NCBI GenBank assembly: GCA_000708835.1
Contig: DF237401.1
Coordinates: 1-64,000 of the forward strand
DNA length: 64,000 nt
Direction of reading: 5' to 3'
Source: Klebsormidium nitens
Lineage: Eukaryota > Plantae > Klebsormidiophyceae
Of this stretch, positions 8,395 through 26,411 are shown in pieces; the stretch's first letter is position 1, and every line of letters starts with the position of its first letter. The position numbers and the translations under genes are program-made. The notes under the pieces are model-generated. The model searched no databases, was not told where the DNA came from, and saw nothing but the letters and a program-made list of their open reading frames with translations.

Positions 8395-9779
8395 GCTTCC
8401 GAGTCACCTGGCACCTCACACACAAGTGCAGCCAGCTGAAGCTGCGCAGGGTGGCAGCACAATGGAAGATTTTTGGCAAACCCCTAGTGGCTAAAATTGC
8501 CTTTTGTGCGCTGGTGAGAGCTCCTGGCACGAAGTATTTAGCTAGGAACTCCGCGCTTCCACTTCGAGGCACTCAACGAAAAGGGAGCTCTTCAATATTG
8601 TGCAGATTTGACAACTCTTCGTATGAGGAGGGTGATTGATCGCTGTGGGATGTTGCTTCCACCTGCACAATATCCTAGGACCCCTGGCAGAGCCAAATTT
8701 CTTAGAGGACTTCTTCCAACCTCCCCAGCTCTAGCTCAGATGGACCAGGCAGCAGAATGCGTGGTTGTGCCTAGGAAGCGTACCCTACTCTGCAGACGCC
8801 ATTCGATGCAAGCAACCTTTTCTGTTGAGCAAGCTAGCGCTGGCAACGGGCCATGGCAACATACCCGCCAGCGGACAACTGGACCACGATGATGACGTAA
8901 GAAAGTTTCTAGTGAGGTCGGGTAGGCACTCCCCCAGGTTTCCGATCGCACGGCTAATGCAGGCTTATGTGGCTATCATCTGACTCATCGGACGGCAGAC
9001 ATATGCAAGCCCAGACTTTCGATCGCCAGTCGACATTTGAGACGGCCAGCTAATTAGATTCATCCCCGCTCTAGTAAAGCCCTTGTGGAGCATACAGGAG
9101 AAGCTTGCGAGTCTGCGCGCGTGGCCTTGGGCGCGCCAATGTGTTCTTCAATTGAACCACACGGACTCACACTGACAGCCCGGGGCCACAAGCTCGGACG
9201 ACAATATATCAATGTTTGTTGATCTGGACTCTGCTCTGGAACATGCATCGTACCTCGTTCAAACTTGTGCATGGTGCTGATCACATGACTTCATGGTTGT
9301 CGCTGAGAATCCGGCCCTGCTGGAAGCCAGATTGTCCTCGAGACCCTATCATTGCTAGCAAGTTGCTTCGTTGGAGCTCGCCGGACAGTTTGCGAGATGG
9401 TAAGACTTGAATCTATTATGCAGAGGACGGAAATGTCGAGGATAAAATCCGTGAAAGGGGTAGAACAATCGCAGCACTGGTTCTCTCGGACAACCTCCAA
9501 GCCGACAAGCCGTCTGCGACTGAGGTCTGGCTTTGCATCTTGCTGACCTCGTCTCTTCGTCCATCTTGGTGGCTTGCAGCGCAAAGATTTGATGCGCCTT
9601 TGGTTTCAGCGCTTGCGAAAGCACCTGTTCGCCAACTCCCCACGCGCAGGTCCTCTCTTACCTCCGAAGCTTGTCCGAGTCTGCAATCAACTCGCCGGAG
9701 CTAGCCAGGGCAAGAAGCTAGCTGTCGCTGACGTTGAGGGAAAAGAAGCAGTCCGCTGATCGACGTGCGAGCAGCCAGC

Positions 9780-12700
9780 ATGGCGCGTTCCCCGACGTAC
9801 GACCCTGCTGCGGGCATGGGCGGGCTGTCCATTTCGGAGGGCGAGGGCGTGTCGTCCAAGGCGGCGCGCTTCCCCGTGCGGCCCAGCCCGGGCACAATCG
9901 GGCGAAGGGCCAACCTGTTCGCCAACCACTTCTTCGCCAGGTTCAAGCCGGAGCTGGAGCTGCACCACTACGACGTGAGGAACATAAGGTTTTTGGACTG
10001 GGTAGCCGTCGCGCATGTTGGGAAGGAGAAGAAAGTGGCTTTTTGCAAGGAAAGCATGGTGCACGCAAGAAGCAGTCAAGCCTGGGCCTTTGCAAACCTG
10101 AGAGGCGCTTCCGAAAGCAGCATGCACTGAACCCTTCGAAGGGGTTGTCAGAACCAGAGAGTTCAACTGGTGCATGGTCCTTTCGTAGGACGGGTGCACG
10201 TCCGAGGAAAGATTTCAGTATGGTGTTGCCCATTCTTCCTTCAGCATTGAGCAGTGTTGCAACGGAGGGAAAATTTTGGAAGCTTTTGGTCTTGCTTAAA
10301 AACGCAATGCAGTATCTGTGGGTGTACTCCATTTTGAGACAGGCCGTCAGTGAGGACAAACGGGTGATTGATGTCTCGAGTCAGCACTTGTGTTTGAGAA
10401 AGTATAGACTGTGCTTTCGAAGTTTCATGAGTCTCTCTCTAAGAATCTCGGAGGGAAGTCTCCTTGGATTCTCAATGGTTACATAAAAGGTTGAATGTCC
10501 TAAAAGAAAGCCCCTCTGTTCCAGACTCAGAAAGAAAACGTACTCTGAAGGTCCTAAGGCTTTGAATTTTATTCCGCTCGTGCATGCCGGCAGAACCCCT
10601 TGAAAATTTTCTTACGAAACAGCATACTTGAGGCTTTCGAAGTAGTTAGTTTCGTTTCCGCCCAATCATTATGACGACCTTGTCAAAGAATGTGTTCGAG
10701 GTCAGTGAAGTGCGGGCTGTGTTGTTCCGCAGGTGTCGCTGACCCCTGAGGTGACGTCACGCGGCGTGCGCCGTGCTGTGATCCGCGAGCTGGTTATACA
10801 GTACCAGCACACAGAGCTGGGCCGCAAGCTGCCCGTCTACGATGGCAACAAGGTGAGCGCCACGCAGGCTTTTCCACTTTCATAACACCTGTGCGAGAGA
10901 CCTGATTCCGCGAAAATTTTCCCAAACTTCAGAAGCCGTACGTTCCCCTTCATGGGAACTTTCAAGTAAGGACAAGTCTATCAGACATTTTGAAATTTGG
11001 CGATTTGGAGGCCACGTCCCCACTAGGAAGAAAATCCCCTTCAATTTTGCCACTTCTAACAAAGTGTAGAGAGATATCGAAAAGCTCGCAGCTCCGAATT
11101 GCTTTTTACTGGTTTGGCTTCATAAGTCGCAATGCAGATTCTGTTCAGCAAGTGAAGCACGGTTACTGACTCCGTGCTACGTGCCTGGTCCGCAGAGCCT
11201 GTACACGGCGGGCCCGCTGCCGTTCCAGAACAAGACGTTCGACATCCAGCTGCCCGAGGAGGATGAAGGGCCCCGCGCAGGCGGAGCACCGTGAGTGGGA
11301 CCATCAAGCTGACAAGTTAACAGTTTCTTTTACTCCAATAAGTTCTCGTGCTTTACAATCCTTGGTGCGGATTCGTTGGCTTTGCTAAAAGCAGGATCCA
11401 GTCCAAAAAGATACCTCTGAACTTCTTTCTGAAAGGTTCTCGTGAGGTTTTTGAACGGCCACTTCTTTCTGTAAGGTTCTTGTGAGCTTTGTGAGCGGCC
11501 TTCTGAATTTTGCAAATGACAGTGAAAGCCCTATCTTCTGACTGTGGGGATCCCGGTCCCTCTGTTCTGCGTCGTCAACGGGATCAAAGCTGCTTTCCTT
11601 GGGGTGCTGGCAGCGCGCGCGGGCGCGAGGAGCGCCGTTTCAAGGTGGTGATAAAGATTGCTGCGCGCGTGGACCTGTTCCGCCTGGACGAGTACCTGGC
11701 GGGCCGCCTGCCCGAGGCGCCGCAGGAGGCGCTGCAGGCGCTCGACATCGTGCTGCGCGAGCAGGCCACCATCAGGTAAAGCGTCGCAACGCCGCAGCGG
11801 GCCAACCGCTGCCCGCGGGGGACAGATGCCGCCGTTCTAGTTCACTTGGCAACTGTTCTGGAAAGTCTGCCAAGCTGTGCCTCACGTGAAGTAGAGAAGA
11901 AGAGGCGAAATGACGGTCAAAAATGAATTCCCTTGCTGCAGCTCCCGCTGTAGCAACCGAAACCTTAATTCTCCGCTCTGACATTGCAAGTAGGTCGCAA
12001 CCGTTGAGGTTTGGATGAGGCTCCTGCTTTCTCTCCGATTCGCCCGTTTCACCGAGCCTTTTCTCTGCTGCGTCCAGGGACGTCCCCGTGGCCCGGTCCT
12101 TCTTCCACTCGGAGCTGGGCACTCGGCAGCTGGGCGGCGGCCTGGTCGCGTGGCGCGGCTACTACCAGTCCCTGCGCCCCACGCAGAGCGGCCTCTCCCT
12201 CAACTTGGGTACGAGAGCGGAGCATACCGATAAAGGAACCTCTTCCGGCAAGCCCGGCTTGCTGCAGCAATGCGCGAGAGCAATTGGCAGCATCCAAACC
12301 ATCCTAATTGCTTCCGAGGATATACATTTTGGAATTGTTTCAAAGCCAAGCGCGTTTCTTCCTTCCTTTGCTCACCCGCCTCCGCTGTCCTGCTTCCAGA
12401 CACGCTGTCGACGGCTTTCTACGAGCCGGTGGACCTGGTGGAGTTCACGTCGCGCATGCTCAACCGCAACGTCCGCCAAGTCCGCGCGCCGCTCAACGAC
12501 GCCGATCGAGTCCGGGTGAGCGCGCGCACTGTGGCGCACATCCTGCACAGAAAATGGTCGAGAAGAGAATAGAAGCTTTCACGACCAGGCAATGCCAAGT
12601 CTTCTGCTGCTTCCTCTGTCAAACCAAGAAAGCGCAGTGTTAAAGTCGATTGAGAGATTGAGATTAGTTTTGGTCGCCATCGTAAAAGGACCCCGGTCCG

Positions 12701-15700
12701 GCTTGGTTCTGGTCTGGTGAACCTGTGTAACTCGATTCGTATGGTGGTGCATGCAGCTGAAGAAGACGCTGGTGGGCGTCAAGGTGGAGGTGACGCACCG
12801 TGGCGACGAGCGTCGCAAGTACCGCATCTCCGGGATCACCAACCAGCCCATCAGCCAACTCAGGCAAGACGCCCAACTACAGCTACTCTGCCGCTCTTTC
12901 GCAGACTCCTGTCTATTTCGCTTTCTTTGAAAACGCTTGCGCTGGGTTGCGAGCTGTCGCAGAGAAGCGAGTTCTCTGAGTCGGGTCTGGATTCCCCTTC
13001 CACTTGCCTCTTGCTGAGCCCCCGGGTGTGCCGTGCTCGCGCAGCTTCCCGATCGAGGGCCGCCAGACGAGCGTGGTGGATTACTTCCGGCAGCAGTACA
13101 ACTACGAGATCAAGTTCGACTGGCTGCCCGCCGTCACCGTGGGCCAGCAAAAGTCGTCCTACCTGCCCTTCGAGGTCTGCGTCATCGTGCCCGGCCAGGT
13201 GCGCGCGCGTACAAGCACCTTCCAGGCAGCCGTGGGAAAAGCGAGCGCTCAAGTCACAGCGTCGAGCCTTCTGATTGTGCACCTTCAGCAAGACAAGACC
13301 ATGGTTGTGCTGCGGCTTTTACAATGCTCTTAAGTGACGCACTTCAAGACAACAGCTACTTCTGATCGATATATGCTGTGACAGCAGCCGGTCTTCTTCT
13401 TCTGGCTGCTGACTTCGCCTGTGCTCTGCTGTTGCTTGTGTCCAGCGCTACTCCAAGAAGCTGTCGGACAAGCAGGTCACGGAGCTGCTGCGCGCCACGT
13501 GCCAGAGGCCGCACGAGAGGATGGGCGAGATCCAAAAGGTCAGAATGCGCAATGGCCAACCACCTACTGAACAGCGGGGATTGTGGAATGGCCTGCCTGG
13601 TCGTTCCTTATGATACAAGTGAGAGGAGGAAAGTCCCTGTATGAATACATAAAACTGCAAAAGCTCAGGACGAACTGCGACTTGCGCCATGATTAGATCT
13701 TCCTTCCGCAATCTGACGATTGAAGACTGGCTGCCTTGCATTCTGACTCTGCCGTTCGTTTTGGGCAGATCGTGGACCGCAACAACTACAACAACGACCC
13801 GTACGTCAAGGAGTTCGGGCTGCACGTCAACCCCAAGATGGCCAACTTCGACGGCCGCATCCTTAACCCGCCCAAGGTGAACGACAACCTGCATCCTTGA
13901 ATCCGGCGGAAAGGTCCTGATCGGGTTCGTGGAGTAAGCTGTCCATTCAACCGAGAAGAAAGGAGCTGACTGCTATCGTTGTGAATATGCTTGCGTGTGA
14001 GTTCGCGTCCGACTCAGACGTAGCATTGCCTAACTTCAAGGAAATCCCGCTTTATTCTTTTTCGTCGTTCCCCTTGCTGTTCATCGTCTTCTGTTTCTGT
14101 CGTGACGTTTCGTTTTACGCTTGCCGTCTTTCTGCAGCTGGTGTTCGGGCGGAATGCGGAGGTGATGCCGGTGATGGGCACGTGGAACATGGCCGGCAAG
14201 GTAAGTTGTGCTTCGAGAGGTTGAATTTAATGTGATTCTTTCTCCCTGTCTCACTACGGTGTCACGCTCTCACGCGCACTCGTACCCACCTACAATAAAA
14301 CCGTCCAGATCTTGCTTCGGCTGCTCTCGAGTGATACTCACAGAGTCCCTTGTTGCGCCTGACGTCACGCTTCGTTCTTTCTCGGCTGTGGTGCAGCAAC
14401 TGGTGACGGGCAGCCAGTGCCCGACGTGGGTGCTCATCAACTTCTCCCCCGCGCGCTGGGTGGACCCGGGGACCGCCAACCGCTTCGCCACCGCGCTCGC
14501 CAACACCTGCAACCAGCTGGGCATCGTAAGGCCCTCAAAAATCTTTCTGGATTTGGCTGTCATGATTATTCTGGTGGATGTTAGCAACTTTTTGAAGCCG
14601 TCAAACTCAAAGGCCAGTATTGAGTTCAGGGGTCTACAATCTCCATGTCTGCTTTGATCAGTTACAGGATGAGCACGTTGCGTCACTCTTACGAACACGC
14701 CTTGCGTTTCCACTGCACCTGGCTGATGCGATCTCCCGCGCTGACGTCACGCAGCAAATGGCGCGGCAGCCGGCGACGGGGACGGTGGCGGCGGACCGCG
14801 CGCTGCGCGACCCGGACCAGCTGGCATCCACGCTGCGCGGGGTGTGCGACGACCTGCGCAGCCGCAACGGGAAGATGCCGGACCTCCTCGTCTGCATCCT
14901 GCCCGACATCGGGCCCTTCTACGGTCAGCAACGCGGGCCCTGCGCAACCATTGGCTAGACTTCGCGGGCTGCTTTTCAGTCGTCAAAATTTGAGCTGGAA
15001 CCGCATATTGCAGGGCCCGAATCTTGATTTGCAACTGTGAAAAAAGGTGCTTCACCTTTCCCATAGAAGATGGAGGCTGGCAGAAGTCCCGTACCGTACA
15101 AGAATCGGTCCGTAAAGACAGTGGACAAAATTCAAATCTAAGTTCCTATGATGTGAAGCCTCCTTGATTGCAAAGAGCGATCTCAATCGCACTCTTCCAG
15201 AACATCGGGAAATCACACCAGGAAAGAACCTGATATTGAGATCTTTTTGTTCGTTGACTTCGTACTTAACGAACCGGGACTCTGAGCGCGCGGGTATGCA
15301 TACAGGCGACATCAAGAAGGTGTGCGAGACGGAGATTGGCGTGCTGTCGCAGTGCGTGCTGAGCAAGCACGTGGGCAAGTGCCAGGCGCAGTACCTCTCC
15401 AACGTGGCGCTCAAAATCAATCTAAAGGTGACGGCCCCCCCTAACGGACTTGCCTTCGCGCTGGCTGCAGGTCAATCGATCTACACCCTAATGCTTGCAT
15501 ATAAAGTATCTGGAACATGGTGGTAATCCGAAACTGGCAAATGATCCGTTAAATGACGAAGCAAGCGCTCCGATCTGCCGAGATGCATCTTCCTTCGTTT
15601 CTGCAGCCACCATTTTCGCATATTTGCATCTGGAGGTTAAGAAGCCAGTTTCTCGTGCGCAATTTATCTTTGGTTTTTCGGCGCGCAGCTGGGCGGCCGC

Positions 15701-18274
15701 AACTTCTTGATGGCGGACGAGTACGCGAAGAAGCTGCCCATGGTGTCCGACAAGCCGACCATCGTCTTCGGGGCGGGGCTCACGCACGCGCACCCGGGGG
15801 AGGAGTCCGCCTCCATGTCCGCGGTGCGCGCGCGCCATCTGTCACCTGAGACACCTTTCCGTTTTGCCGGGATCCCGTTTGTTGAAATTTTTCCCACGAA
15901 AATGTTGGAAATTTGTCTTTGTAATTCCAAGTTTTGTGTGCGTATGATTACCCAAAGCTCTTGTTTCACGAATCCAAGAGGATAGCAATGGTCAATGGTC
16001 AATGGTCAATGGTCAGAAGATCTTTGTTCTGCCGGTTGTTTTCCATCTTCCAGCATGCCCAATCGCACCCTTTTCAACCGCTTCCCCGCCGTCTCTTCGC
16101 AGGTGGTAGGCAGCGTGGACTGGCCGTACGTAAACCGGTACCAGTGCCGCGTGAGCAGCCAGCCCGCGCGGCTGGAAATCCTGCAGGACCTGTACACGTG
16201 CAAGCGCACCGCGGGCGGCCAGATGCAGCACGGCGGGGTCATCCGCGAGCTGCTCATCGCCTTCTACCAGGCCACCGGCCAGAAGCCCGCGCGCGTCATC
16301 TTCTTCCGGTCAGCCCGCGTCAGCCGGTTCCAATATCCGACGTTTCGGCTCTCTGAGCTGGCAATAACTGATTTTGCGTGCTGCTCGAAGGCAGCCCTCA
16401 GGCCTGCCGTTCAGAAGTGCGGTTCTTAAGAAGCAAGTTGTGCATACCATTGAACACCACGAAAGCTTCAAGAATGTCAAGACGGAACGGATCTTAACGG
16501 TATATCTTTTCCATCGACCGGCTGTTCTTTGCGTGCAGGGACGGTGTGAGCGAGGGACAGTTCCAGCACGTGCTTATGTATGAGCTGGACGCGATCCGCA
16601 GGGTAAGACGGCTTCGCTTCGAAACGAGACTGGACTGTTTGCAACGTGCAGGGGGCTCGTCTGATCGAAAACATCTTGAATCCGTGGCGGGGCATCACGC
16701 GTATGAGATGCTGAGGAACTTTTGGAGGTCACTGAGAGCAATGAGCGCTTTTGATACGTCTCTGTTGTACGTCCTCAATCCTTCGTTAGATCCTATTACA
16801 ATTGACACGTCACAGGAGGCACTTAAAATCCTTTGATACTATCTTTAAAAGCTGTCGAATCGAACTTCGGCGCTCTTCTGCAGGCGTGCGCGAGTCTGGA
16901 GGCTGGGTATCAGCCGACGGTGACCTGGATCGTGGTCCAGAAGCGGCACCACCTGCGCCTCTTCCCGGGCGACCAGAACAAGGACCGCAGCGGCAACACC
17001 GTGCCCGGTAAATATCGTTGAAAGGACATATTTCTTGTTGGGGAAAGAAGTCTATGCTTTTCTGCTCAACTTCTGATCATCTTTTCCTCCTGTTGAACAA
17101 TCTGGCCTGTCTCTGTCTGCACGTTTGAGGTGATTCACTCTGAACCCCTGACCTTTAAGGGTTCGAGCATCGTTGCGTCGTCTTCTGCCGCGCTCACCAG
17201 TACCCAGACGCCCACTTTGCCGCGACCCTTCCCCCGCTGACTCGTGCTGCCTCCCGTGTGCGCGCGCAGGCACGGTGGTGGACACGACGGTGTGCCATGT
17301 GCGCGAGTGGGACTACTATTTGTGCAGCCACGCGGGCATCCAGGGCACGAGCCGGCCGACGCACTACCACGTGCTGGCGGACGAGAACGGCTTCAGCACG
17401 GACCAGCTGCAGAACATCACCAACAGCCTCTGCTACACCTACCAGCGCTGCACGCGCTCCGTCTCCATCGGTCAGCGCCGCGACCCAGCGCCTTTCGGTC
17501 GCATTCTAGACTCTTTGTGCTTCATCTTCCGACGGAGAATATGTTGTCTTTTCTTGTCACCGAGCAGTAAGTCTACGGCATCTTTGGAAGTGATGAAAAC
17601 CGAGTGCGGCTCGGTAATTGCGGCTCGATCAGTGGAGCGCCGCGATCGGCGCGGCTTGCTGAGCCCATCCCTGGTTGGCTGATGCGTTTCTGTCCAGCTT
17701 CTGAGAACAAGTCAGGGGCTTGGGTGCAAGCTTTAGTTATGGGAGTTTGAGCTCAGAATATAATACGTGGTCGAGAGCTCAACGCCCCTCATTAGGCGAA
17801 AGCCTGAAGACATCATCATTCAGTGATCGTTTGATTCTGAAGTATCCATCCTTCTCCGAGTTTAGCCGAGAAGGTTTTCGTGGCGCGAGATCGTCTTGCA
17901 CCATCTAGATTTCTAGGAAGGTCCTGCGAGAGACCAACAAAATCCTCACATCAACAGCTTCTGCACTCTTCTGCCATTAAGCCTTATCTTCTTGGCCTCA
18001 CGATCGTTGTGGCGAGCATACGTATCCATGCATTTGTTTCAGTGGCTTCTTTCTGGTGCGCGCAGTCCCGCCGGTGTACTACGCAGGCCTGGGCGCTTTC
18101 AGGGCCAAGTTTTACCTGGAAGGCGGAGAAAGCAGTGGCGGAGAAAGCAGCAGCGGCATCAGCGCTACGGGGGGCGCCCCCAGCGCGCGCACGAGCACCG
18201 GCAGAAGCTCGCGCGCGCCCGCGCCCATGCCGCCGCTCAAGGAAAACATCAAGAAGACAATGTTTTTCTGCTGA
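9780..18274 (+). CDS. AGO: Argonaute (N, PAZ, MID, PIWI; AGO1/5/10-like), 20 exons, 900 aa, predicted slicer-inactive
   Basis: Exons 9780-9974, 10733-10852, 11196-11290, 11614-11775, 12078-12208, 12400-12515, 12757-12863, 13045-13198, 13446-13538, 13769-13876, 14138-14200, 14397-14525, 14755-14923, 15306-15427, 15689-15823, 16103-16308, 16539-16602, 16884-17007, 17270-17470, 18066-18274; total 2703 nt, in frame. Motifs [111 protein letters not shown]-terminal MFFC. Subclade is by resemblance only. Confidence 0.96.
12864..13044 (+). other. Non-canonical GC-AG intron in the AGO PAZ region
   Basis: AG|GCAAGA donor at 12864 and gcgcag| acceptor at 13044 give the in-frame QPISQLSFPIEG. Confidence 0.8.
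15986..16013 (+). repeat. Intronic minisatellite (CAATGGT)x4
   Basis: Four perfect 7-bp copies in AGO intron 15. Confidence 0.9.
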
Positions 18275-19491
18275 GGAGAGTCACGGGAGGACCTCGGTCA
18301 AACGGTTTAGGAAAAGTTTGATGGGCTGTTTATGGAGAAAGAAGCTGATCAAGGATGAAAGGCTGGCATGGCAAGCAACGGATTACGCGGCGTGTGCCCT
18401 TTGTTGACCGGTCGGCCAGATGAATGAACCCACCGTAGCTGAGGTGAGTGTAGATCGTAACAAGTGAAAACGGGAGTCTGGGAGGGATTCTACTGGTACG
18501 TTGGTTTATATGCTTAATCGGAACTAGTTTCGATGGACTAGAAGCGAGTAGAAAATGGTGATTGGGTATGTGGGCCGTGAGAAGATCAGGCTTAACGAAG
18601 CAGGTGTACAGTTAGCCGCTGATTGAGTGGAAAGTTGAGGACACACGAGCTCGTACTGTGACTGGTCTTGTATACTAGATAACTTTGCCTGCAACATGTA
18701 CATATTCCGCTTCTCTTTGAAGTCAGCAATTATAAATAGGTTCTTTGACGCGGGGAAGCATCGTGGACCGTTGGTTGAGGCTCCTCGACTAAGCAGCCAG
18801 CCCATTGAGGTGCAGTTATGGCTGCCACTTACTTTCAGTGTCAATGCTGTGGAAAAGGTTGAGAGTCAAGCCATACCTTCGCTTAAATAGATGAGTATTC
18901 TCATGCAGCTGGATGCACCGCAAATTCATGCTCTGCGGGAATGCAGATGATCCGATGGAGTTCACTGCTTGGCAGGTTTGGCTCTTGAATAGCCGCCCCT
19001 TGTTCTGGCAGCGAGAGTATGGATGCAAGCAGTCGTGAAAAAGCAGAGCTTACCTCGTGTATTCTTGAATGCATGTAAATCGTTCGCCGGCGCTGATCCT
19101 AAAAGCTTGTGGCGGTTGTATACGTGTACCTGAACTTGACTATAATATAATCAGTTCTTTGAACGCTCAGCAAAGGTTTTGCAAGAACCTTCGTGGCTGA
19201 ACAACGGCTCAGGTAATGCAGAAACTGATAAAAGAGGATTGTAAGTTCTCCGATCAGAGTCTCGAAGTCCCTTTTGGCATTGTCTTGCCCTGGTCGTGTT
19301 GCGTGCGACGAGCAAGGCCTTGTTCACGCGGCAATTCTGAGGCGGGCCGGTGCGGCCGTCGGATGTGCCACGTGACAGCATCGGACGGCAGGACCTGGGT
19401 CCGCTCCACCTGCCCACAAAATGTGCGGCACAGGGTTGGACGCCTTTATATGGACAAAGAAGCCGCACTTCTGCAACGCCAGAGGCGTACA

Positions 19492-22023: not shown

Positions 22024-25000
22024 CTAGTCCTCGTCCTCGTCTTCCTCTTCCGCGTGCAGCGCCCGCTTGGCGGTTTCGAAGACGACCCAGGAGAGGCCGG
22101 CGACGGGCACGACCTGCGCCACCTGCGCGCCGACGCCCTTGTACAGCCCGGCCACGCCCTCCGTGCGCACCACGCCGCGCACCGCCTCCACCACGTTGCG
22201 GTACGCCGCGTTGGCCGCCTTGCCCGTCTCCACCGCGGGCAGCACGCTCACGCTCACCTGCGGGAATACCGGGACAAACGTGAACAACGCGCAGAGGAAA
22301 AATCGAGGATTCAAGGAGGATTTGCGAAGGCAACGGCGGCAGCAATTGGCAGGCTCTGCTTCGCCTGATCTGAGCAGCAGAATGAGGTTCCTGCATTTAC
22401 TGTCTTGATTGAGAGGCGATAAAGATGGGTCTCGAATCATCAACGCTGAAAACCGTTCAACGCGTCCCCTTATGAACCTCTTCACCCTTAAGACATCGAT
22501 GAACTCTTGAGCAATTTGAGATGCACAGGCCATCGTCAGGCAATACAAGATGCCGTCATAAAAAGTCACTTGGGGTTGCGGCGCGAGTACAGCAGCGGCG
22601 GACCGCCACCAGATTAGTGCGTACCTGCTTGCGGGCGACCTCGAGCGGATAGGTCGCCAGCTGGCTGACCGCCCCCGCCGTGGCGCCGAAGAGGAGGGTG
22701 TACCCAGCGGGGACCTGCACGCACGGGCAGAACAGACACTTCGATTGAGTTCTACCGATAAACAACCTAGACTGAGATTGCTCACACAGAAGCAGGCCAA
22801 GTAACAGTTGCGAGTGTGACGGCAGCTTCTGTCAGCGACAGATTACACTGGCAGCGGCGGCGCGCTCACGTGCTTGCGGCCTGTCCTCTTGCGGTAGCGC
22901 TCCTTGAGCGTGTCGTAGGTGTAGTAGTTGACGGCGGACTGCGGCACGATGCCCAGCAGCGCGGGCACCACGCCACGGTATAGCGCGGGGAGGCCGCCCT
23001 CGTGGAGCATCACCTCCCGGAGCGCGTCGCCGAAACCCTTGTACTTCTCGGGCTGCATAAGACAAGAGGGCGTGAGGGTCAGCCTGGGTTAGCATGAACG
23101 TAGTAACGGATGTCGTGAAGTCCTGGCTAGCAGTGTTGCTTTCCAAAGCCTATGGCCAAGACGTTGACACCGCTGGTATCGTTAACGTAGATGTCTTAGT
23201 ACGGTGTGCTTCATTCAGTCGAACCAAGAGAACAATCGGCTTTACGAGCCCATGCCTCATAACTGTTTCCATTCGATTCATTGTGCCATGTCATTGGTCA
23301 AAACCGCCTGGGATGGCACGAGCACCTATGAAGAAAAGCTTCAACTGGAATTGAACGACCAGATTTCTTCGCTCTTCTTGCACCATCCGAAGCTGCTCCC
23401 TTGAGCTGCCGCACTAGCCCCCAAGATGCATTGCAAGGAAGCGGTTGGGGAAAGCGCCCAGAGGAAAGGCGACAACAGAAGATGCGAAACTGCACCTTAA
23501 GCAACACTCTCCGCTCACCATGACGAGGACGCGGTCCTTGAGCGTCTCGAAGGGGTACGCGACCAGCGTGTTGGCCAGCCCCGCGGCCATGCCCGCCCAC
23601 GTGGACTCTGGCACCTGGCGCGGCAGCTTATCCAGCAGCGGGATCTGGTGGTCGCCGGGCCGCCCGCGCCGCTTCAGCTTGGCCTTCACCTTCTCGTACG
23701 TCACCAGCTGCACCAAAGAGGGATTGTACAGTTTACAAAGAGAAGTCGAGAAAGGACGAAGCAAGAGATTGCTGCAGAGGCAGGACACTGAGAGTCGACG
23801 AATGGCTAGCTTGAGTGAGGCCTCTGGTTGGGCGGCAGAAGAGAGCGAAGGACAACAAAATCCAACTAATTTTGTAGGATTATGAAGCTCCGAAAATAGG
23901 CCAGGCGATTTTTGGATCCACAAGGTGGCTGTCTCGATGTTGCGGATTTAGATGTTCATCGATGGACGACCTCAGTTTTTCACCGTGATGGAGTTTGCCA
24001 AGCAACAGGAATCAACGGAAAAGTACAGGAAGCTGAACAATCGATTTGTGGTCAGCCTTTTCATAATGTGAATTCAAAAGCGCTACTCTCGCTGGGGGCG
24101 CACCTCGACCGACTTGGTGAGCGCGACCCTAAGAACATTGATGCCGAAGGAGCCGGTGGTCTGCTTGATCGGCCAGTTGCGACCGCTCTTGCGGTTGAGC
24201 GTCTTGACCACTTCCTTCACGTTGTCCCCCGCTCGGCCCCCCAGCAGCTTAGTCCGCACCACTTCCAGGGGCGTGGCCGCGGTTTGGGCAATCGCACCTG
24301 CACACAACAGGCACGGCGAGCTTGAAGGCTTGCTGATCGACAGAGTAGAAACCATGTGAACAGACGTAGAAACAGCTGCGAGTGCCAGCAATTCCTTGCC
24401 TGGAACACGCTTCGAAGTACGAACAACACCCGGAAGAAGCCTTGTCGACAGCTCGTGGTAAATGGCAAAACGACAAGACTAGCACCCAACAAACACAATT
24501 CTGGGACGAGAGACTCGAAAGAGGAGCAGCTATCCCACCTGCAATCCCGCCTGCCAGTAGCTCCTTGACAGTCTTGCTGTGGATGCTGATGAAGGGCGTC
24601 TCCACGCGTTTTACTGTCACGCGCACGTCGTCACCCACCACGTCACGCGTCCGCTCCAGTGCGTGCTTCGCACCCTGCGCCACCTCCTGCAATCATTTAA
24701 TGGGCCTCAGTGCCGCTCAATGGAAATCCAATGCTTGCGGGCAGGGCGGCAGAATTGATAATATGAGGCGGCTTCTTTGCTGGTCAATTGGACTATACCA
24801 ATAACAGATTCAAAATACTCCACCGATCTCACAAACGTGGAAGAGAAAGTCACCCGTATCGGAGAAAATCAGAAAACATTCCGAGCGAACCTCTCACGAA
24901 ACGTTGAAGCACCGATAGGATGTGCGGAACATTGGTACAGAAAGGGCCTGAAAACCTGGAGCCCTACCTCAGCTGTGCCCTCAACATAGCCAGCCGTGTA

Positions 25001-26411
25001 TCCTGCGCCCTCCACTACTTTATCAGCGGCCCGGTCCAGCTTAGCCCCCAGCCCCCTCCCCGCTTCTTTGGCTTCCTGCGCAGTCCCGCTGACCACCCCT
25101 TTTGCGGCCCCCACACCCTCTGCTATCTTGTCCGTCCCCTCGTCCGCTTTCCTGCCCAGCCACCAGACTGGCTTGGCTGCGGTCCTCTTTGCTTCCTCCG
25201 CCTTTCTTGTGGCCGCTTCCCTCGTCCTCTCTGCATCCTCCTCCAAATCTTCAGCAGTCTCCTCGACCCTTCCCTTCAATTTCTGTCCTTTCTCGCCCAC
25301 TTTATCCTTCACCTCCCCCAGCTTCTCTTTACTCCTCTCCGCCGCGCCCTTCACCTTCTGTGCCCCCCGCTGCGCAGCCTCTTGTGCCTGCTCCGCTTTC
25401 TCTGCGGCGGCTCGCTTGGCATCGTCCGCCTTCTCCGCTGCCGTCTGCTCCGCAGCATGAATGTTGGACCACATCTTCTGGGCGGTCTCCTCCGCCGCCC
25501 GGTCTGCTTTCTCTCTCTTCTCCCACCACTTGCCCTTCACTTCCTGCTTGGCATGCTGGCTCTGCTCTTCCACCGTCTCCTCCGCGCGCCGCGCCTTTTC
25601 CTTGACGCCTTCCTTGATCTGCCAGGCCTTGTCCCTCACCGTGTCAATCGTGCCGCTCGCCCGCTCTGCTACAGCATTGGCCCCTCTTTCAGTCCCGCGC
25701 TTGAGCCTGCTGCCTGTATCGGACGCCTTCTCAGCAACTGCGCACATGCACCAAAGACCCGCACTAATCAGGCACCATCAGAGGGGCATATACAGAAAGG
25801 AACTGCAGTGGCGCTAGGCCTGCAAGTCCCATGATGGAAGGGTGCCGTGGCTGGGACATCAGCGTGTATGGCAGGTCAGCATTTTAAAACAGTGTTTGAA
25901 GCAGCTACAGACTTTCGACAGGTCTAAAAACAGTATCAGAGTGGTTAACAATGCAAGCAAGGGCACTTATCATGACTTCCTGCCCTCAGCTTTCCTTCAT
26001 GCACAATCAGTCAGTCGAATTCAAAAACGCCATGACCAAGATACCCCTGCACCGAAGACCAACTGTAGAAAGTCCTGAACAGCCAGTGCTTGTCGTCCAC
26101 CCTCAGCATTGCCTTTTCACGTCTCTGCTGACTCTTCCAAGTGCGCGTTGTGCCCCACCTTCGTCCGCATGCTGCTCCCCCCTCTGCCTGCCGCGCTCTG
26201 CCGCACCGCCTGCCTTTCCCTTGAGGTGCTCCAGCTGCTCCTTGACGCCCCGTGCCTGCTCGTCTGCCTTCTCCTTGACGTGCCCTGCCTCGTGCTGCAG
26301 CGCTCCCTGCACTTCTTCCCGCGTCTCCTGCAGCTCCTCCCACGCGCGCTGTCCGTTGCGCTCCGCCTGCTCGTGCTGGCCCGACCCGCGGCCGATCCCA
26401 AAGAGCCCCAT
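22024..26411 (-). CDS. Fusion protein: N-terminal LEA-like (group 3/LEA_4-type 11-mer) region plus SLC25 mitochondrial-carrier domain (BT1/Brittle1-like adenine nucleotide carrier), 8 exons, 686 aa
   Basis: Exons 26411-26159, 25737-24968, 24686-24539, 24297-24104, 23707-23519, 23052-22870, 22714-22625, 22257-22024; all GT-AG, total 2061 nt in frame. Carrier signatures PLEVVRTKL, PFETLKDRV, PLEVARKQ, plus LYRGVVPALLGIVP and LYKGVG. The first 341 aa are K/E/A/Q/R/G-rich with 11-aa periodicity. The carrier part is near-certain; the fusion junction is predicted. Confidence 0.8.

What the first reader, a model, noticed from the sequence alone, without database searches (positions are those of the whole stretch)
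15767..18097. Intact Argonaute with both outer catalytic residues replaced by Gly (G-E-D-G tetrad): predicted slicer-dead AGO
Seen: PIWI motif 1 reads [15 protein letters not shown] (GGG at 15776-15778) where slicing AGOs have GADVTH. The C-terminal motif reads [13 protein letters not shown] (GGC at 18086-18088) instead of YYAHLAAFRA. Glu (16175, RLEIL) and Asp (16540, RDGVSEG) are retained, and the His of the usual QxHRxE loop is Ala (QPARLE). Each change needs at least 2 nt substitutions, so sequencing error is unlikely. The 900-aa ORF, PAZ and MID 5'-phosphate residues (Y..K..Q..K) are intact, so this is not a pseudogene. Established: the DEDH/D tetrad coordinates Mg2+ for slicing. Inference: a specialised non-slicing AGO of the normally slicing AGO1/5/10-like group in an alga, which might act by translational repression, guide sequestration (decoy) or effector recruitment.
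Basis: partly seen in the sequence, partly recalled or inferred. Interest (0 to 1): 0.85.

Follow-up and report, generated by a model that had tools for sequence, protein, structure and literature searches.

The report
Slicer-dead Argonaute conserved in Klebsormidium
A real, expressed and strongly conserved Argonaute gene of a Klebsormidium-type green alga has glycine at two of the four residues needed to cut RNA, so it probably silences by binding rather than slicing; the literature had already noted this loss in passing.

Summary
A 20-exon, 893-aa Argonaute gene (window 9780-18271, + strand) reads G-E-D-G where slicing Argonautes read D-E-D-H/D: GGG 15776-78, GAA 16175-77, GAC 16540-42, GGC 18086-88.

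It is neither an artefact nor a pseudogene.
- Spliced RNA contigs from two studies confirm four introns and the His-to-Gly codon.
- Three other Klebsormidium-like assemblies carry the same G-E-D-G, with synonymous differences in both Gly codons.
- dN/dS is 0.07-0.12 at dS up to 0.46. Exons are 89% identical and introns 53%.

The MID 5'-phosphate residues, the PAZ domain, the C-terminal MFFC and the key GW-pocket residues are all kept.

Relatives in Mesostigma, Chlorokybus, Closterium and land plants have DEDH/DEDD, so the loss is derived.

The best reading is a guide-binding, non-slicing effector that acts by recruitment, steric block or sequestration. Slicing itself was not tested.

Novelty is modest. 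bioRxiv 10.1101/2022.01.18.476847 already states that the algal AGO1/5/10-like clade (K. nitens, Interfilum, Chara) lacks the DDH triad. It gives no per-protein detail and infers the opposite polarity.

The scan had noted this same stretch once before, in an overlapping window (s1-277718), not on other DNA. I could not retrieve the K. nitens paralogues.

The parts
9780..18274 (+). Whole coding span of the Argonaute gene: 20 exons, 893 aa, stop TGA 18272-18274
   Evidence: Own protein-to-genome spliced alignment against P0014. Four junctions are confirmed by RNA contigs. The 5' end (ATG 9780) is not confirmed by RNA.
9780..9974 (+). Exon 1: start codon and beginning of the N domain (…[19 protein letters not shown]…)
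   Evidence: The same start is seen in L002.
10733..10852 (+). Exon 2 (N domain)
11196..11269 (+). Exon 3 (N domain); GC donor
11614..11775 (+). Exon 4 (end of ArgoN)
   Evidence: Pfam ArgoN E=1.6e-8
12078..12208 (+). Exon 5 (linker L1)
   Evidence: The orthologous ORF in L002 hits ArgoL1.
12400..12515 (+). Exon 6
12757..12863 (+). Exon 7 (PAZ, first part); GC donor
13045..13198 (+). Exon 8 (PAZ core)
   Evidence: Pfam PAZ E=2.2e-11
13446..13538 (+). Exon 9
13769..13876 (+). Exon 10 (linker L2)
   Evidence: The orthologous ORFs hit ArgoL2.
14138..14200 (+). Exon 11
   Evidence: same size in L001, L002 and L004
14397..14525 (+). Exon 12 (MID, first part)
14755..14923 (+). Exon 13 (MID; ends …LPDIGPFY, the 5'-phosphate Tyr)
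   Evidence: RNA contig X9 covers 14762-14922 and joins to 15305
15306..15427 (+). Exon 14 (MID: DIKK…SQC…ALKINLK, the Lys/Gln/Lys/Lys of the 5'-phosphate pocket)
   Evidence: Best PDB match is the AtAGO1 MID domain 4g0p, E=5e-13. RNA joint 14922/15305.
15689..15823 (+). Exon 15 (PIWI start; [13 protein letters not shown])
   Evidence: Aligns to AtAGO10 680-721. RNA joint 15822/16102.
15776..15778 (+). GGG = Gly611 at the position of the first catalytic Asp
   Evidence: The codon is GGC (Gly) in L001, L002 and L004. Not covered by RNA contigs.
16103..16308 (+). Exon 16 (PIWI; VDWPY, glutamate-finger loop [16 protein letters not shown])
   Evidence: RNA contig X26 covers 16102-16309 with no differences. 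Aligned to AtAGO10 727-793.
16175..16177 (+). GAA = Glu651, retained glutamate finger
   Evidence: GAG in the relatives.
16539..16602 (+). Exon 17 (PIWI; RDGVSEGQF…AIRR)
   Evidence: Pfam Piwi. The loose end of RNA contig X26 reads GACGGTGTGAGCGAGGG, which joins 16309 to 16540.
16540..16542 (+). GAC = Asp696, retained second catalytic Asp
16884..17007 (+). Exon 18 (PIWI; ACASLEAGY…[11 protein letters not shown])
   Evidence: Pfam Piwi. Aligned to HsAgo2 690-728 and to AtAGO10.
17270..17470 (+). Exon 19 (PIWI core; [22 protein letters not shown]…CTRSVSI)
   Evidence: Pfam Piwi E=1e-26. PDB AtAGO10 E=1e-30. RNA contigs X13 and X9.
18066..18271 (+). Exon 20 (PIWI end; [17 protein letters not shown], Gly/Ser-rich tail, C-terminal MFFC)
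   Evidence: RNA joint 17469/18065. Contigs X9 and X25 cover it with no differences. Aligned to AtAGO10 929-988.
18086..18088 (+). GGC = Gly832 at the position of the catalytic His
   Evidence: Present in two RNA contigs. GGG (Gly) in L001, L002 and L004.

Best explanation
This is a functional Argonaute of the plant AGO1/5/10-like group in a Klebsormidium-type streptophyte alga. An earlier scan note names the organism as K. nitens; I did not verify that.

The protein keeps the parts that hold a small-RNA guide: the PAZ domain, the MID 5'-phosphate pocket and the C-terminal carboxylate motif. It also keeps the PIWI fold. It has glycine at two of the four metal-binding residues of the RNase-H-like active site (G-E-D-G instead of D-E-D-H).

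It should therefore bind a guide and a target but be unable to cut the target by the canonical two-metal mechanism. Its output would then be slicer-independent. The most likely route is recruitment of partners through its intact tryptophan (GW/WG) pockets. Steric or translational block and sequestration of small RNAs are alternatives.

Shown here: the sequence state, splicing, expression, conservation and purifying selection. Inferred: loss of slicing, guide loading and the downstream route.
For: Codons and motifs.

Gene model and expression: a complete 20-exon CDS without stops. Spliced RNA contigs from four runs of two studies confirm four junctions and the Glu, Asp and His-to-Gly codons.

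Conservation: the orthologous loci L001, L002/L003 and L004 come from three other assemblies. All read G-E-D-G, and both Gly codons differ synonymously from the window. The 25-residue stretches around the four sites are nearly invariant.

Selection: dN/dS is 0.067-0.123, with bootstrap upper bounds of 0.16 or less, at dS 0.2-0.46. Exon identity is 0.89 against intron identity 0.53.

Retained functional residues: the MID exon matches the AtAGO1 MID domain best and keeps K, Q, K, K. The equivalents of HsAgo2 K660, L694, R688, F653 and AtAGO1 W785 are all present (residue list from bioRxiv 10.1101/2025.10.18.683247; alignments).

Specificity of the change: only 6 of 93 near-invariant family columns differ, and two of those lie in the first catalytic motif.

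Established knowledge: the DEDH/D tetrad coordinates the catalytic Mg2+ ions, and mutating any of its residues abolishes slicing in Argonautes that have been studied.
Against: - No biochemical test exists. Slicing loss, guide loading and partner binding are all inferences.
- The first Gly codon (15776-78) is not covered by RNA contigs.
- Expression looks low, with contig depths of 2-6.
- The Glu finger and the second Asp are retained and conserved. That could mean a residual or altered activity, although both also have structural roles.
- My trees leave the position relative to land-plant AGO1/5/10 unresolved.
- I could not retrieve the other five K. nitens AGOs. 'Specialised paralogue beside slicing-competent ones' therefore rests on the literature (the AGO4/6-like proteins have a DDD triad) and on an unchecked scan note (s1-327067).
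Confidence: 0.8

Rival explanations
1. The non-slicing state is ancestral. On this view the algal AGO1/5/10-like proteins never had the triad, and land plants gained slicing later. This is the reading given in bioRxiv 10.1101/2022.01.18.476847.
For: The paper's text says that the algal clade (K. nitens, Interfilum, Chara) lacks DDH while land-plant clades have it.
Against: Relatives from earlier-branching streptophytes carry the full tetrad: Mesostigma P0073/P0076 and Chlorokybus P0087/P0140. So do Zygnematophyceae (Closterium P0005 DEDH; P0019/P0015 DEDD), the AGO4 clade and an insect AGO2. On either tree a single change on the Klebsormidium stem explains the data. DEDH is the eukaryote-wide ancestral state (established knowledge).
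Confidence: 0.07
2. The protein is still a nuclease. It would use the retained Glu and Asp with other residues, or a single-metal mechanism.
For: Glu651 and Asp696 and their surrounding motifs are invariant across the four taxa.
Against: Both replaced positions are Gly, which has no side chain to bind metal. No new acidic residue or His appears next to either site: [12 protein letters not shown] matches the usual GADVTHPxPGED apart from the Gly, and the other site reads [10 protein letters not shown]. Single tetrad mutations abolish slicing in AGOs that have been studied (established knowledge).
Confidence: 0.05
3. It is a decaying or neutrally drifting duplicate, that is, a young pseudogene that is still transcribed.
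For: Two catalytic residues are lost, and RNA contig depth is low.
Against: The CDS is intact in four taxa. dN/dS is 0.07-0.12, with upper bootstrap bounds of 0.16 or less, at dS up to 0.46. Introns have diverged to 53-63% identity while exons stay at 89-96%. Both Gly codons changed synonymously only.
Confidence: 0.03
4. It is an assembly or sequencing artefact at the two codons.
For: None, beyond the lack of RNA coverage at 15776-78.
Against: Each K. nitens codon differs from Asp or His codons at two bases. Two RNA contigs read GGC at 18086-88. Three independent assemblies (Logan SRR23617307, Logan SRR14092360, JGI 3300060284/5) encode Gly at both sites.
Confidence: 0.01

Closest known systems
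Arabidopsis AGO10 / AGO1 (solved structures 7sva; MID domain 4g0p)
   Same: It has the same N-PAZ-MID-PIWI architecture. AGO10 and AGO1 are the best solved-structure matches for every PIWI and MID exon. It keeps the 5'-phosphate pocket, the self-filling Trp of pocket 2, GW pockets 1 and 3, and a C-terminal MF(F/Y)C.
   Different: The tetrad is G-E-D-G instead of D-E-D-H. The glutamate-finger loop reads QPARLE instead of QAHRQE. The N-terminal extension is short. The loop before the 5'-phosphate Tyr is different and one residue shorter. The basic residue of AtAGO1 at R834 is Gln here.
K. nitens / Interfilum / Chara 'AGO1/5/10-like' ('Proto-AGO') proteins of bioRxiv 10.1101/2022.01.18.476847
   Same: This is almost certainly one of the four K. 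nitens proteins listed there (GWHPBAVF003502, 009449, 010558, 020766). The paper states that this algal clade lacks the DDH triad.
   Different: The paper gives no per-protein residues in its text. It does not mention G-E-D-G, selection or expression, and it infers that slicing was gained later. I could not tell which of the four accessions this gene is.
Naturally slicer-deficient Argonautes (human AGO1 DEDR, human AGO4 DEGR, many nematode WAGOs, a monocot AGO18 subclade)
   Same: In these proteins guide binding is kept, tetrad residues are lost, and the output goes through partners or steric effects. The human and nematode cases are established knowledge; the AGO18 subclade is.
   Different: Here both outer residues are lost together, and both are Gly. 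The protein sits in a lineage whose land-plant relatives depend on slicing. No partner or small-RNA cargo is known.

Membership tests
Eukaryotic Argonaute (AGO clade) | N, L1, PAZ, L2, MID and PIWI domains in that order | tested here: met
   Pfam ArgoN, PAZ and Piwi hit exon pieces. ArgoL1, ArgoL2 and PAZ hit ORFs of the orthologous loci. It aligns over 831-871 residues to full-length AGOs at 49-50% identity.
Eukaryotic Argonaute (AGO clade) | MID 5'-phosphate pocket (Tyr, Lys, Gln, Lys, Lys) and a C-terminal carboxylate motif | tested here: met
   …PFYGDIKK…SQC…ALKINLK… aligns residue for residue with the AtAGO1 MID domain 4g0p. The C-terminus MFFC aligns with MFYC of AtAGO10. The roles of these residues come from established structural knowledge.
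Slicing-competent Argonaute | PIWI catalytic tetrad Asp-Glu-Asp-His/Asp | tested here: not met
   Gly611, Glu651, Asp696 and Gly832 align with AtAGO10 D709, E750, D795 and H935. The state is conserved in four taxa.
Slicing-competent Argonaute | Guide-directed cleavage of a complementary target | not testable with these tools
   This needs an in vitro slicer assay or degradome data.
Plant AGO1/5/10 clade | Phylogenetic placement with land-plant AGO1/5/10 rather than AGO4/6/9 or AGO2/3/7 | tested here: inconclusive
   It is separated from AGO4/6 (SH-aLRT 98). By path length and identity its nearest relatives are AGO1/5-type proteins and environmental AGO1-like transcripts at 50-57%. The backbone is a polytomy. 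Published trees place the K. nitens proteins as AGO1/5/10-like. No AGO2/3/7 sequence was included in my trees.
GW/WG-binding Argonautes | Key residues of Trp pockets 1 and 3 (HsAgo2 K660, L694, R688; AtAGO1 K839, L873, R867) | tested here: met
   The residue list is from bioRxiv 10.1101/2025.10.18.683247. The Kn equivalents lie in QKPARV, ASLEAGY and AIRRAC (alignments; the AIRRAC position was counted from the DGVSEGQF motif). Binding itself was not tested.
Expressed, selected gene (not a pseudogene) | Intact CDS, spliced transcripts, dN/dS well below 1 | tested here: met

The most novel reading that the evidence does not exclude
The loss of slicing may not be confined to one paralogue. It could characterise the AGO1-lineage effectors of Klebsormidiophyceae, and perhaps Chara, as a whole. 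Post-transcriptional silencing in these early multicellular streptophytes would then run in a slicing-independent, GW-partner-dependent mode resembling animal miRISC. The intact Trp pockets fit this reading, as do the GW-rich proteins that the scan noted elsewhere in this genome.
Probability: 0.15. Interest if true: 0.65.

Novelty: new member of a known kind. Interest (0 to 1): 0.35.

Why it matters
Land-plant AGO1 works mainly by slicing, whereas animal miRNA Argonautes work mainly by recruiting GW182. Here an AGO1-like protein in an early-branching multicellular streptophyte has lost slicing. It keeps its guide-binding pockets and GW pockets under strong selection. That makes it a natural test case for slicer-independent silencing in the green lineage.

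The finding also corrects a published inference. The tetrad is present in Mesostigma, Chlorokybus and Closterium relatives, so the Klebsormidium state is a loss. Slicing in land plants was therefore inherited, not gained.

Catalytically inactive Argonaute paralogues are common in eukaryotes, and the missing triad in this clade is already in print. The finding is therefore useful but not very surprising.

Tried and rejected
**Attempts to retrieve the annotated K. nitens protein, its paralogues and deeper orthologues**
- The spliced protein cannot be passed to the tools by reference, so I searched by exon.
- The search for homologous proteins with the last exon found no candidates.
- A scaffold alignment (Chlorokybus and Closterium proteins plus window and L002 exon rows, A4) gave 7 hits, none from Klebsormidium.
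- The ORF holding the Glu exon recovered only P0001-P0003 again.
- The single metagenome scan, run with the conserved PIWI exon, returned 80 AGO contigs, none a Klebsormidium orthologue or identifiable paralogue (best 79% identity to the query exon). I used them only as a background survey.
- Two algal-looking fragments (P0072, P0121) led to short soil-metagenome contigs that carried no useful information.
- Cluster look-ups of 30 representatives named only angiosperms, Closterium, Chlorokybus, Mesostigma, Chara AGO4/6-like and Wollemia.

**Other steps that led nowhere**
- Two trees left the backbone unresolved.
- I made no structure prediction, because no reference exists for the spliced protein.
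- I rejected a weak upstream 'exon' at 9579-9678 from the first spliced alignment as spurious. It has no AG acceptor and no conservation, and the Met at 9780 is shared with L002.
- There is no second AGO and no alternative Asp- or His-encoding exon in the window.

- Read laying was given 5,951 letters.
Full report
**What is in the sequence**

The window holds one Argonaute gene, on the + strand. Stop-free pieces between about 9.7 and 18.3 kb hit Pfam ArgoN, PAZ and Piwi.

I wrote a protein-to-genome spliced aligner and guided it with a full-length AGO5-type protein (P0014). It gave 20 coding exons from ATG 9780 to TGA 18272-74, encoding 893 residues. All introns are GT/GC..AG.

- GGG 15776-78, in FGAGLTH;
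- GAA 16175-77, in ARLEIL;
- GAC 16540-42, in FRDGVSEG;
- GGC 18086-88, in YYAGLGAF.

Exon-wise alignment to the solved Arabidopsis AGO10 (7sva) places them on Asp709, Glu750, Asp795 and His935, counted from the printed alignments. The glutamate-finger loop is QPARLE, against AQAHRQE in AGO10.

**Is it real and expressed?**

I laid Logan contigs of four RNA runs of the same organism label, from two studies, on 12450-18400. They give:
- spliced joints 14922/15305, 15822/16102 and 17469/18065;
- a loose end that joins 16309 to 16540.

All four agree with the model. Spliced joints show that these contigs derive from RNA.

The contigs cover the Glu codon, the second Asp codon and, in two contigs, the GGC at the His position, with no differing letters. 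They do not cover 15776-78, and their depth is low (2-6).

**Is it conserved?**

A search of 1.84 billion cluster representatives with the Glu exon found three near-identical ORF fragments (P0001-P0003). Their contigs are orthologous genomic loci from other assemblies:
- L001, from Logan SRR23617307;
- L002/L003, from JGI metagenomes 3300060284/5, holding the complete gene;
- L004, from Logan SRR14092360.

L001 also carries a mitochondrial-carrier ORF downstream of the AGO gene. An earlier scan note (s1-344068) reports a carrier gene in the window at 22024-26411, so synteny is possible; I did not align the two regions.

Spliced alignment with the window protein gave the same exon structure in each. 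All read G-E-D-G. The first Gly codon is GGC in the relatives and GGG in the window. The last is GGG in the relatives and GGC in the window. Both glycines have therefore been kept through synonymous change.

| Measure | Value |
|---|---|
| Pairwise dN/dS | 0.067-0.123 |
| Bootstrap upper bounds on dN/dS | 0.16 or less |
| dS | 0.2-0.46 |
| dN/dS in the PIWI part | 0.05-0.11 |
| Exon identity, window vs L002 | 0.89 |
| Intron identity, window vs L002 | 0.53 |

The 25-residue stretches around the four sites are almost invariant. This excludes a pseudogene, neutral drift and assembly error.

**What is kept and what is changed**

The MID exon matches the Arabidopsis AGO1 MID domain best (4g0p, E=5e-13). 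It keeps the Lys, Gln, Lys and Lys of the 5'-phosphate pocket, and the Tyr sits at the end of the preceding exon. The PAZ domain and the C-terminal MFFC are present.

I took the key residues of the tryptophan pockets from bioRxiv 10.1101/2025.10.18.683247: HsAgo2 K660 and L694 for pocket 1, F653 for pocket 2, R688 for pocket 3, and AtAGO1 W785, which self-fills pocket 2. All have their equivalents here, in QKPARV, ASLEAGY, AFYQ, AIRRAC and VDWPY.

In an alignment with 18 diverse AGOs, 93 columns are near-invariant. The Klebsormidium proteins differ at only six of them:
- D611G and the adjacent V612L;
- T740L, in QKRHH-T-RLF;
- P768V and F773Y, in CH-P-xEFD-F;
- L589M.

His832 was not counted there because the Closterium proteins have Asp at that position. 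The protein is therefore a well-preserved Argonaute with a targeted loss in the catalytic centre.

**How unusual, and which direction of change?**

Among the 125 representatives, essentially every full-length protein is DEDH or DEDD. Among 80 environmental AGO contigs, 52 are DEDH and 1 is DEDD. A few have single variants, and none has Gly at the first Asp or at the His.

The named relatives with an intact tetrad are:
- Mesostigma (P0073, P0076);
- Chlorokybus (P0087, P0140);
- Closterium (P0005 DEDH; P0019 and P0015 DEDD);
- the Chara AGO4/6-like protein (P0086);
- land-plant AGO1/5/MEL1-type proteins and AGO4.

In two ML trees the Klebsormidium G-E-D-G proteins form a tight clade on a stem of about 0.5. 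They are separated from AGO4/6 (SH-aLRT 98), and their nearest relatives by path are AGO1/5-type proteins. The backbone is unresolved. On either tree one change on the Klebsormidium stem explains the data, so the state is derived.

**Literature**

bioRxiv 10.1101/2022.01.18.476847 analysed 196 green-plant genomes. It lists four AGO1/5/10-like and two AGO4/6-like proteins in K. nitens, each with an Interfilum orthologue. It states that the algal clade (K. nitens, Interfilum, Chara) is the exception to the DDH triad in AGO1/5/10/18. It also states that the algal AGO4/6-like proteins have DDD.

It concludes that land plants evolved cleavage ability after the split from algae. The DEDH tetrads in Mesostigma, Chlorokybus and Closterium argue against that conclusion.

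No paper I could find gives the G-E-D-G state, its selection, its expression or any biochemistry. The bare fact is therefore in print, and the characterisation is not.

**Mechanism**

It is established that the tetrad binds the two catalytic Mg2+ ions. Glycine cannot do this, and no new acidic or His residue appears beside either site. The most likely reading (0.8) is a guide-loaded, target-binding, non-slicing effector.

The downstream route is inferred. Partner recruitment through Trp pockets 1 and 3 is favoured, because those residues are kept. GW-rich candidates also exist in this genome: the literature reports AGO hooks on the K. nitens Pol V-like subunit, and unchecked scan notes mention others. 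Steric or translational block and AGO10-like sequestration remain possible.

The rivals are weaker. An ancestral non-slicing state gets 0.07, residual non-canonical nuclease activity 0.05, a decaying duplicate 0.03 and an artefact 0.01.

**Limits**

- The organism name (K. nitens) comes from an earlier scan note and fits the literature, but I did not verify it.
- I could not retrieve the annotated protein, the other paralogues or the Chara proteins. I therefore cannot say which of the four published accessions this is. That slicing-competent paralogues exist rests on the paper and on an unchecked scan note (s1-327067).
- No structure was predicted.
- The 5' end of the model has no RNA support.

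**Verdict**

The gene is a conserved, expressed, predicted slicer-dead Argonaute. It is a new, better-documented member of a known kind (catalytically inactive AGO paralogues), and the bare loss is already noted in the literature. Interest is 0.35.

Noticed in passing
L002:11940-12124 and L004:4747-4921, versus window 18066-18271: The two more distant orthologues split the last coding exon with an extra GT..AG intron of about 180 nt inside the Gly/Ser-rich C-terminal tail. The window and L001 have a single 206-nt exon. This is an intron gain or loss within the genus. It might instead be an artefact of the aligner bridging an indel.
   Followed up: no
window 14890-14923 and 15306-15330: The MID loop before the 5'-phosphate Tyr reads [10 protein letters not shown]. 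From memory, Arabidopsis AGO1 has LPDNNGSLYGD there, including the Asn linked to 5'-U preference. The Klebsormidium loop is one residue shorter and has no Asn, so its 5'-nucleotide preference may differ.
   Followed up: no
window 16953-16955, 17299-17301 and 17314-17316 (residues 740, 768, 773): Three further near-invariant PIWI positions are changed in all Klebsormidium orthologues examined: QKRHH-T-RLF to L, CH-P-xEFDF to V, and EFD-F to Y. They may be secondary adjustments after the loss of catalysis. They were not mapped on a structure.
   Followed up: partly
window 15340-15377: RNA contig X9 record 4 stops at 15360 and continues with 17 letters that fold back on the local inverted repeat GCTCAGC…GCTGAGC. 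This looks like an assembly artefact, not a splice variant.
   Followed up: no
window 18060-18065: RNA contig X25 starts 6 nt upstream of the last acceptor (18066). It is either unspliced RNA or a minor alternative acceptor, at depth about 2.
   Followed up: no
P0073, P0076, P0087, P0140, P0005, P0019, P0015 (not in the window): AGO relatives in Mesostigma, Chlorokybus and Closterium carry DEDH or DEDD. This contradicts the published inference that cleavage ability of the AGO1/5/10 group arose only after the algae/land-plant split.
   Followed up: partly
L042, L044, L043, L072, L079, L083 (environmental AGO contigs): A few environmental AGO contigs show single tetrad variants under a quick local alignment: DEGH twice, DQDH, DSDH, D-NH and H-DR. 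Some may be alignment slips. They were not checked.
   Followed up: no
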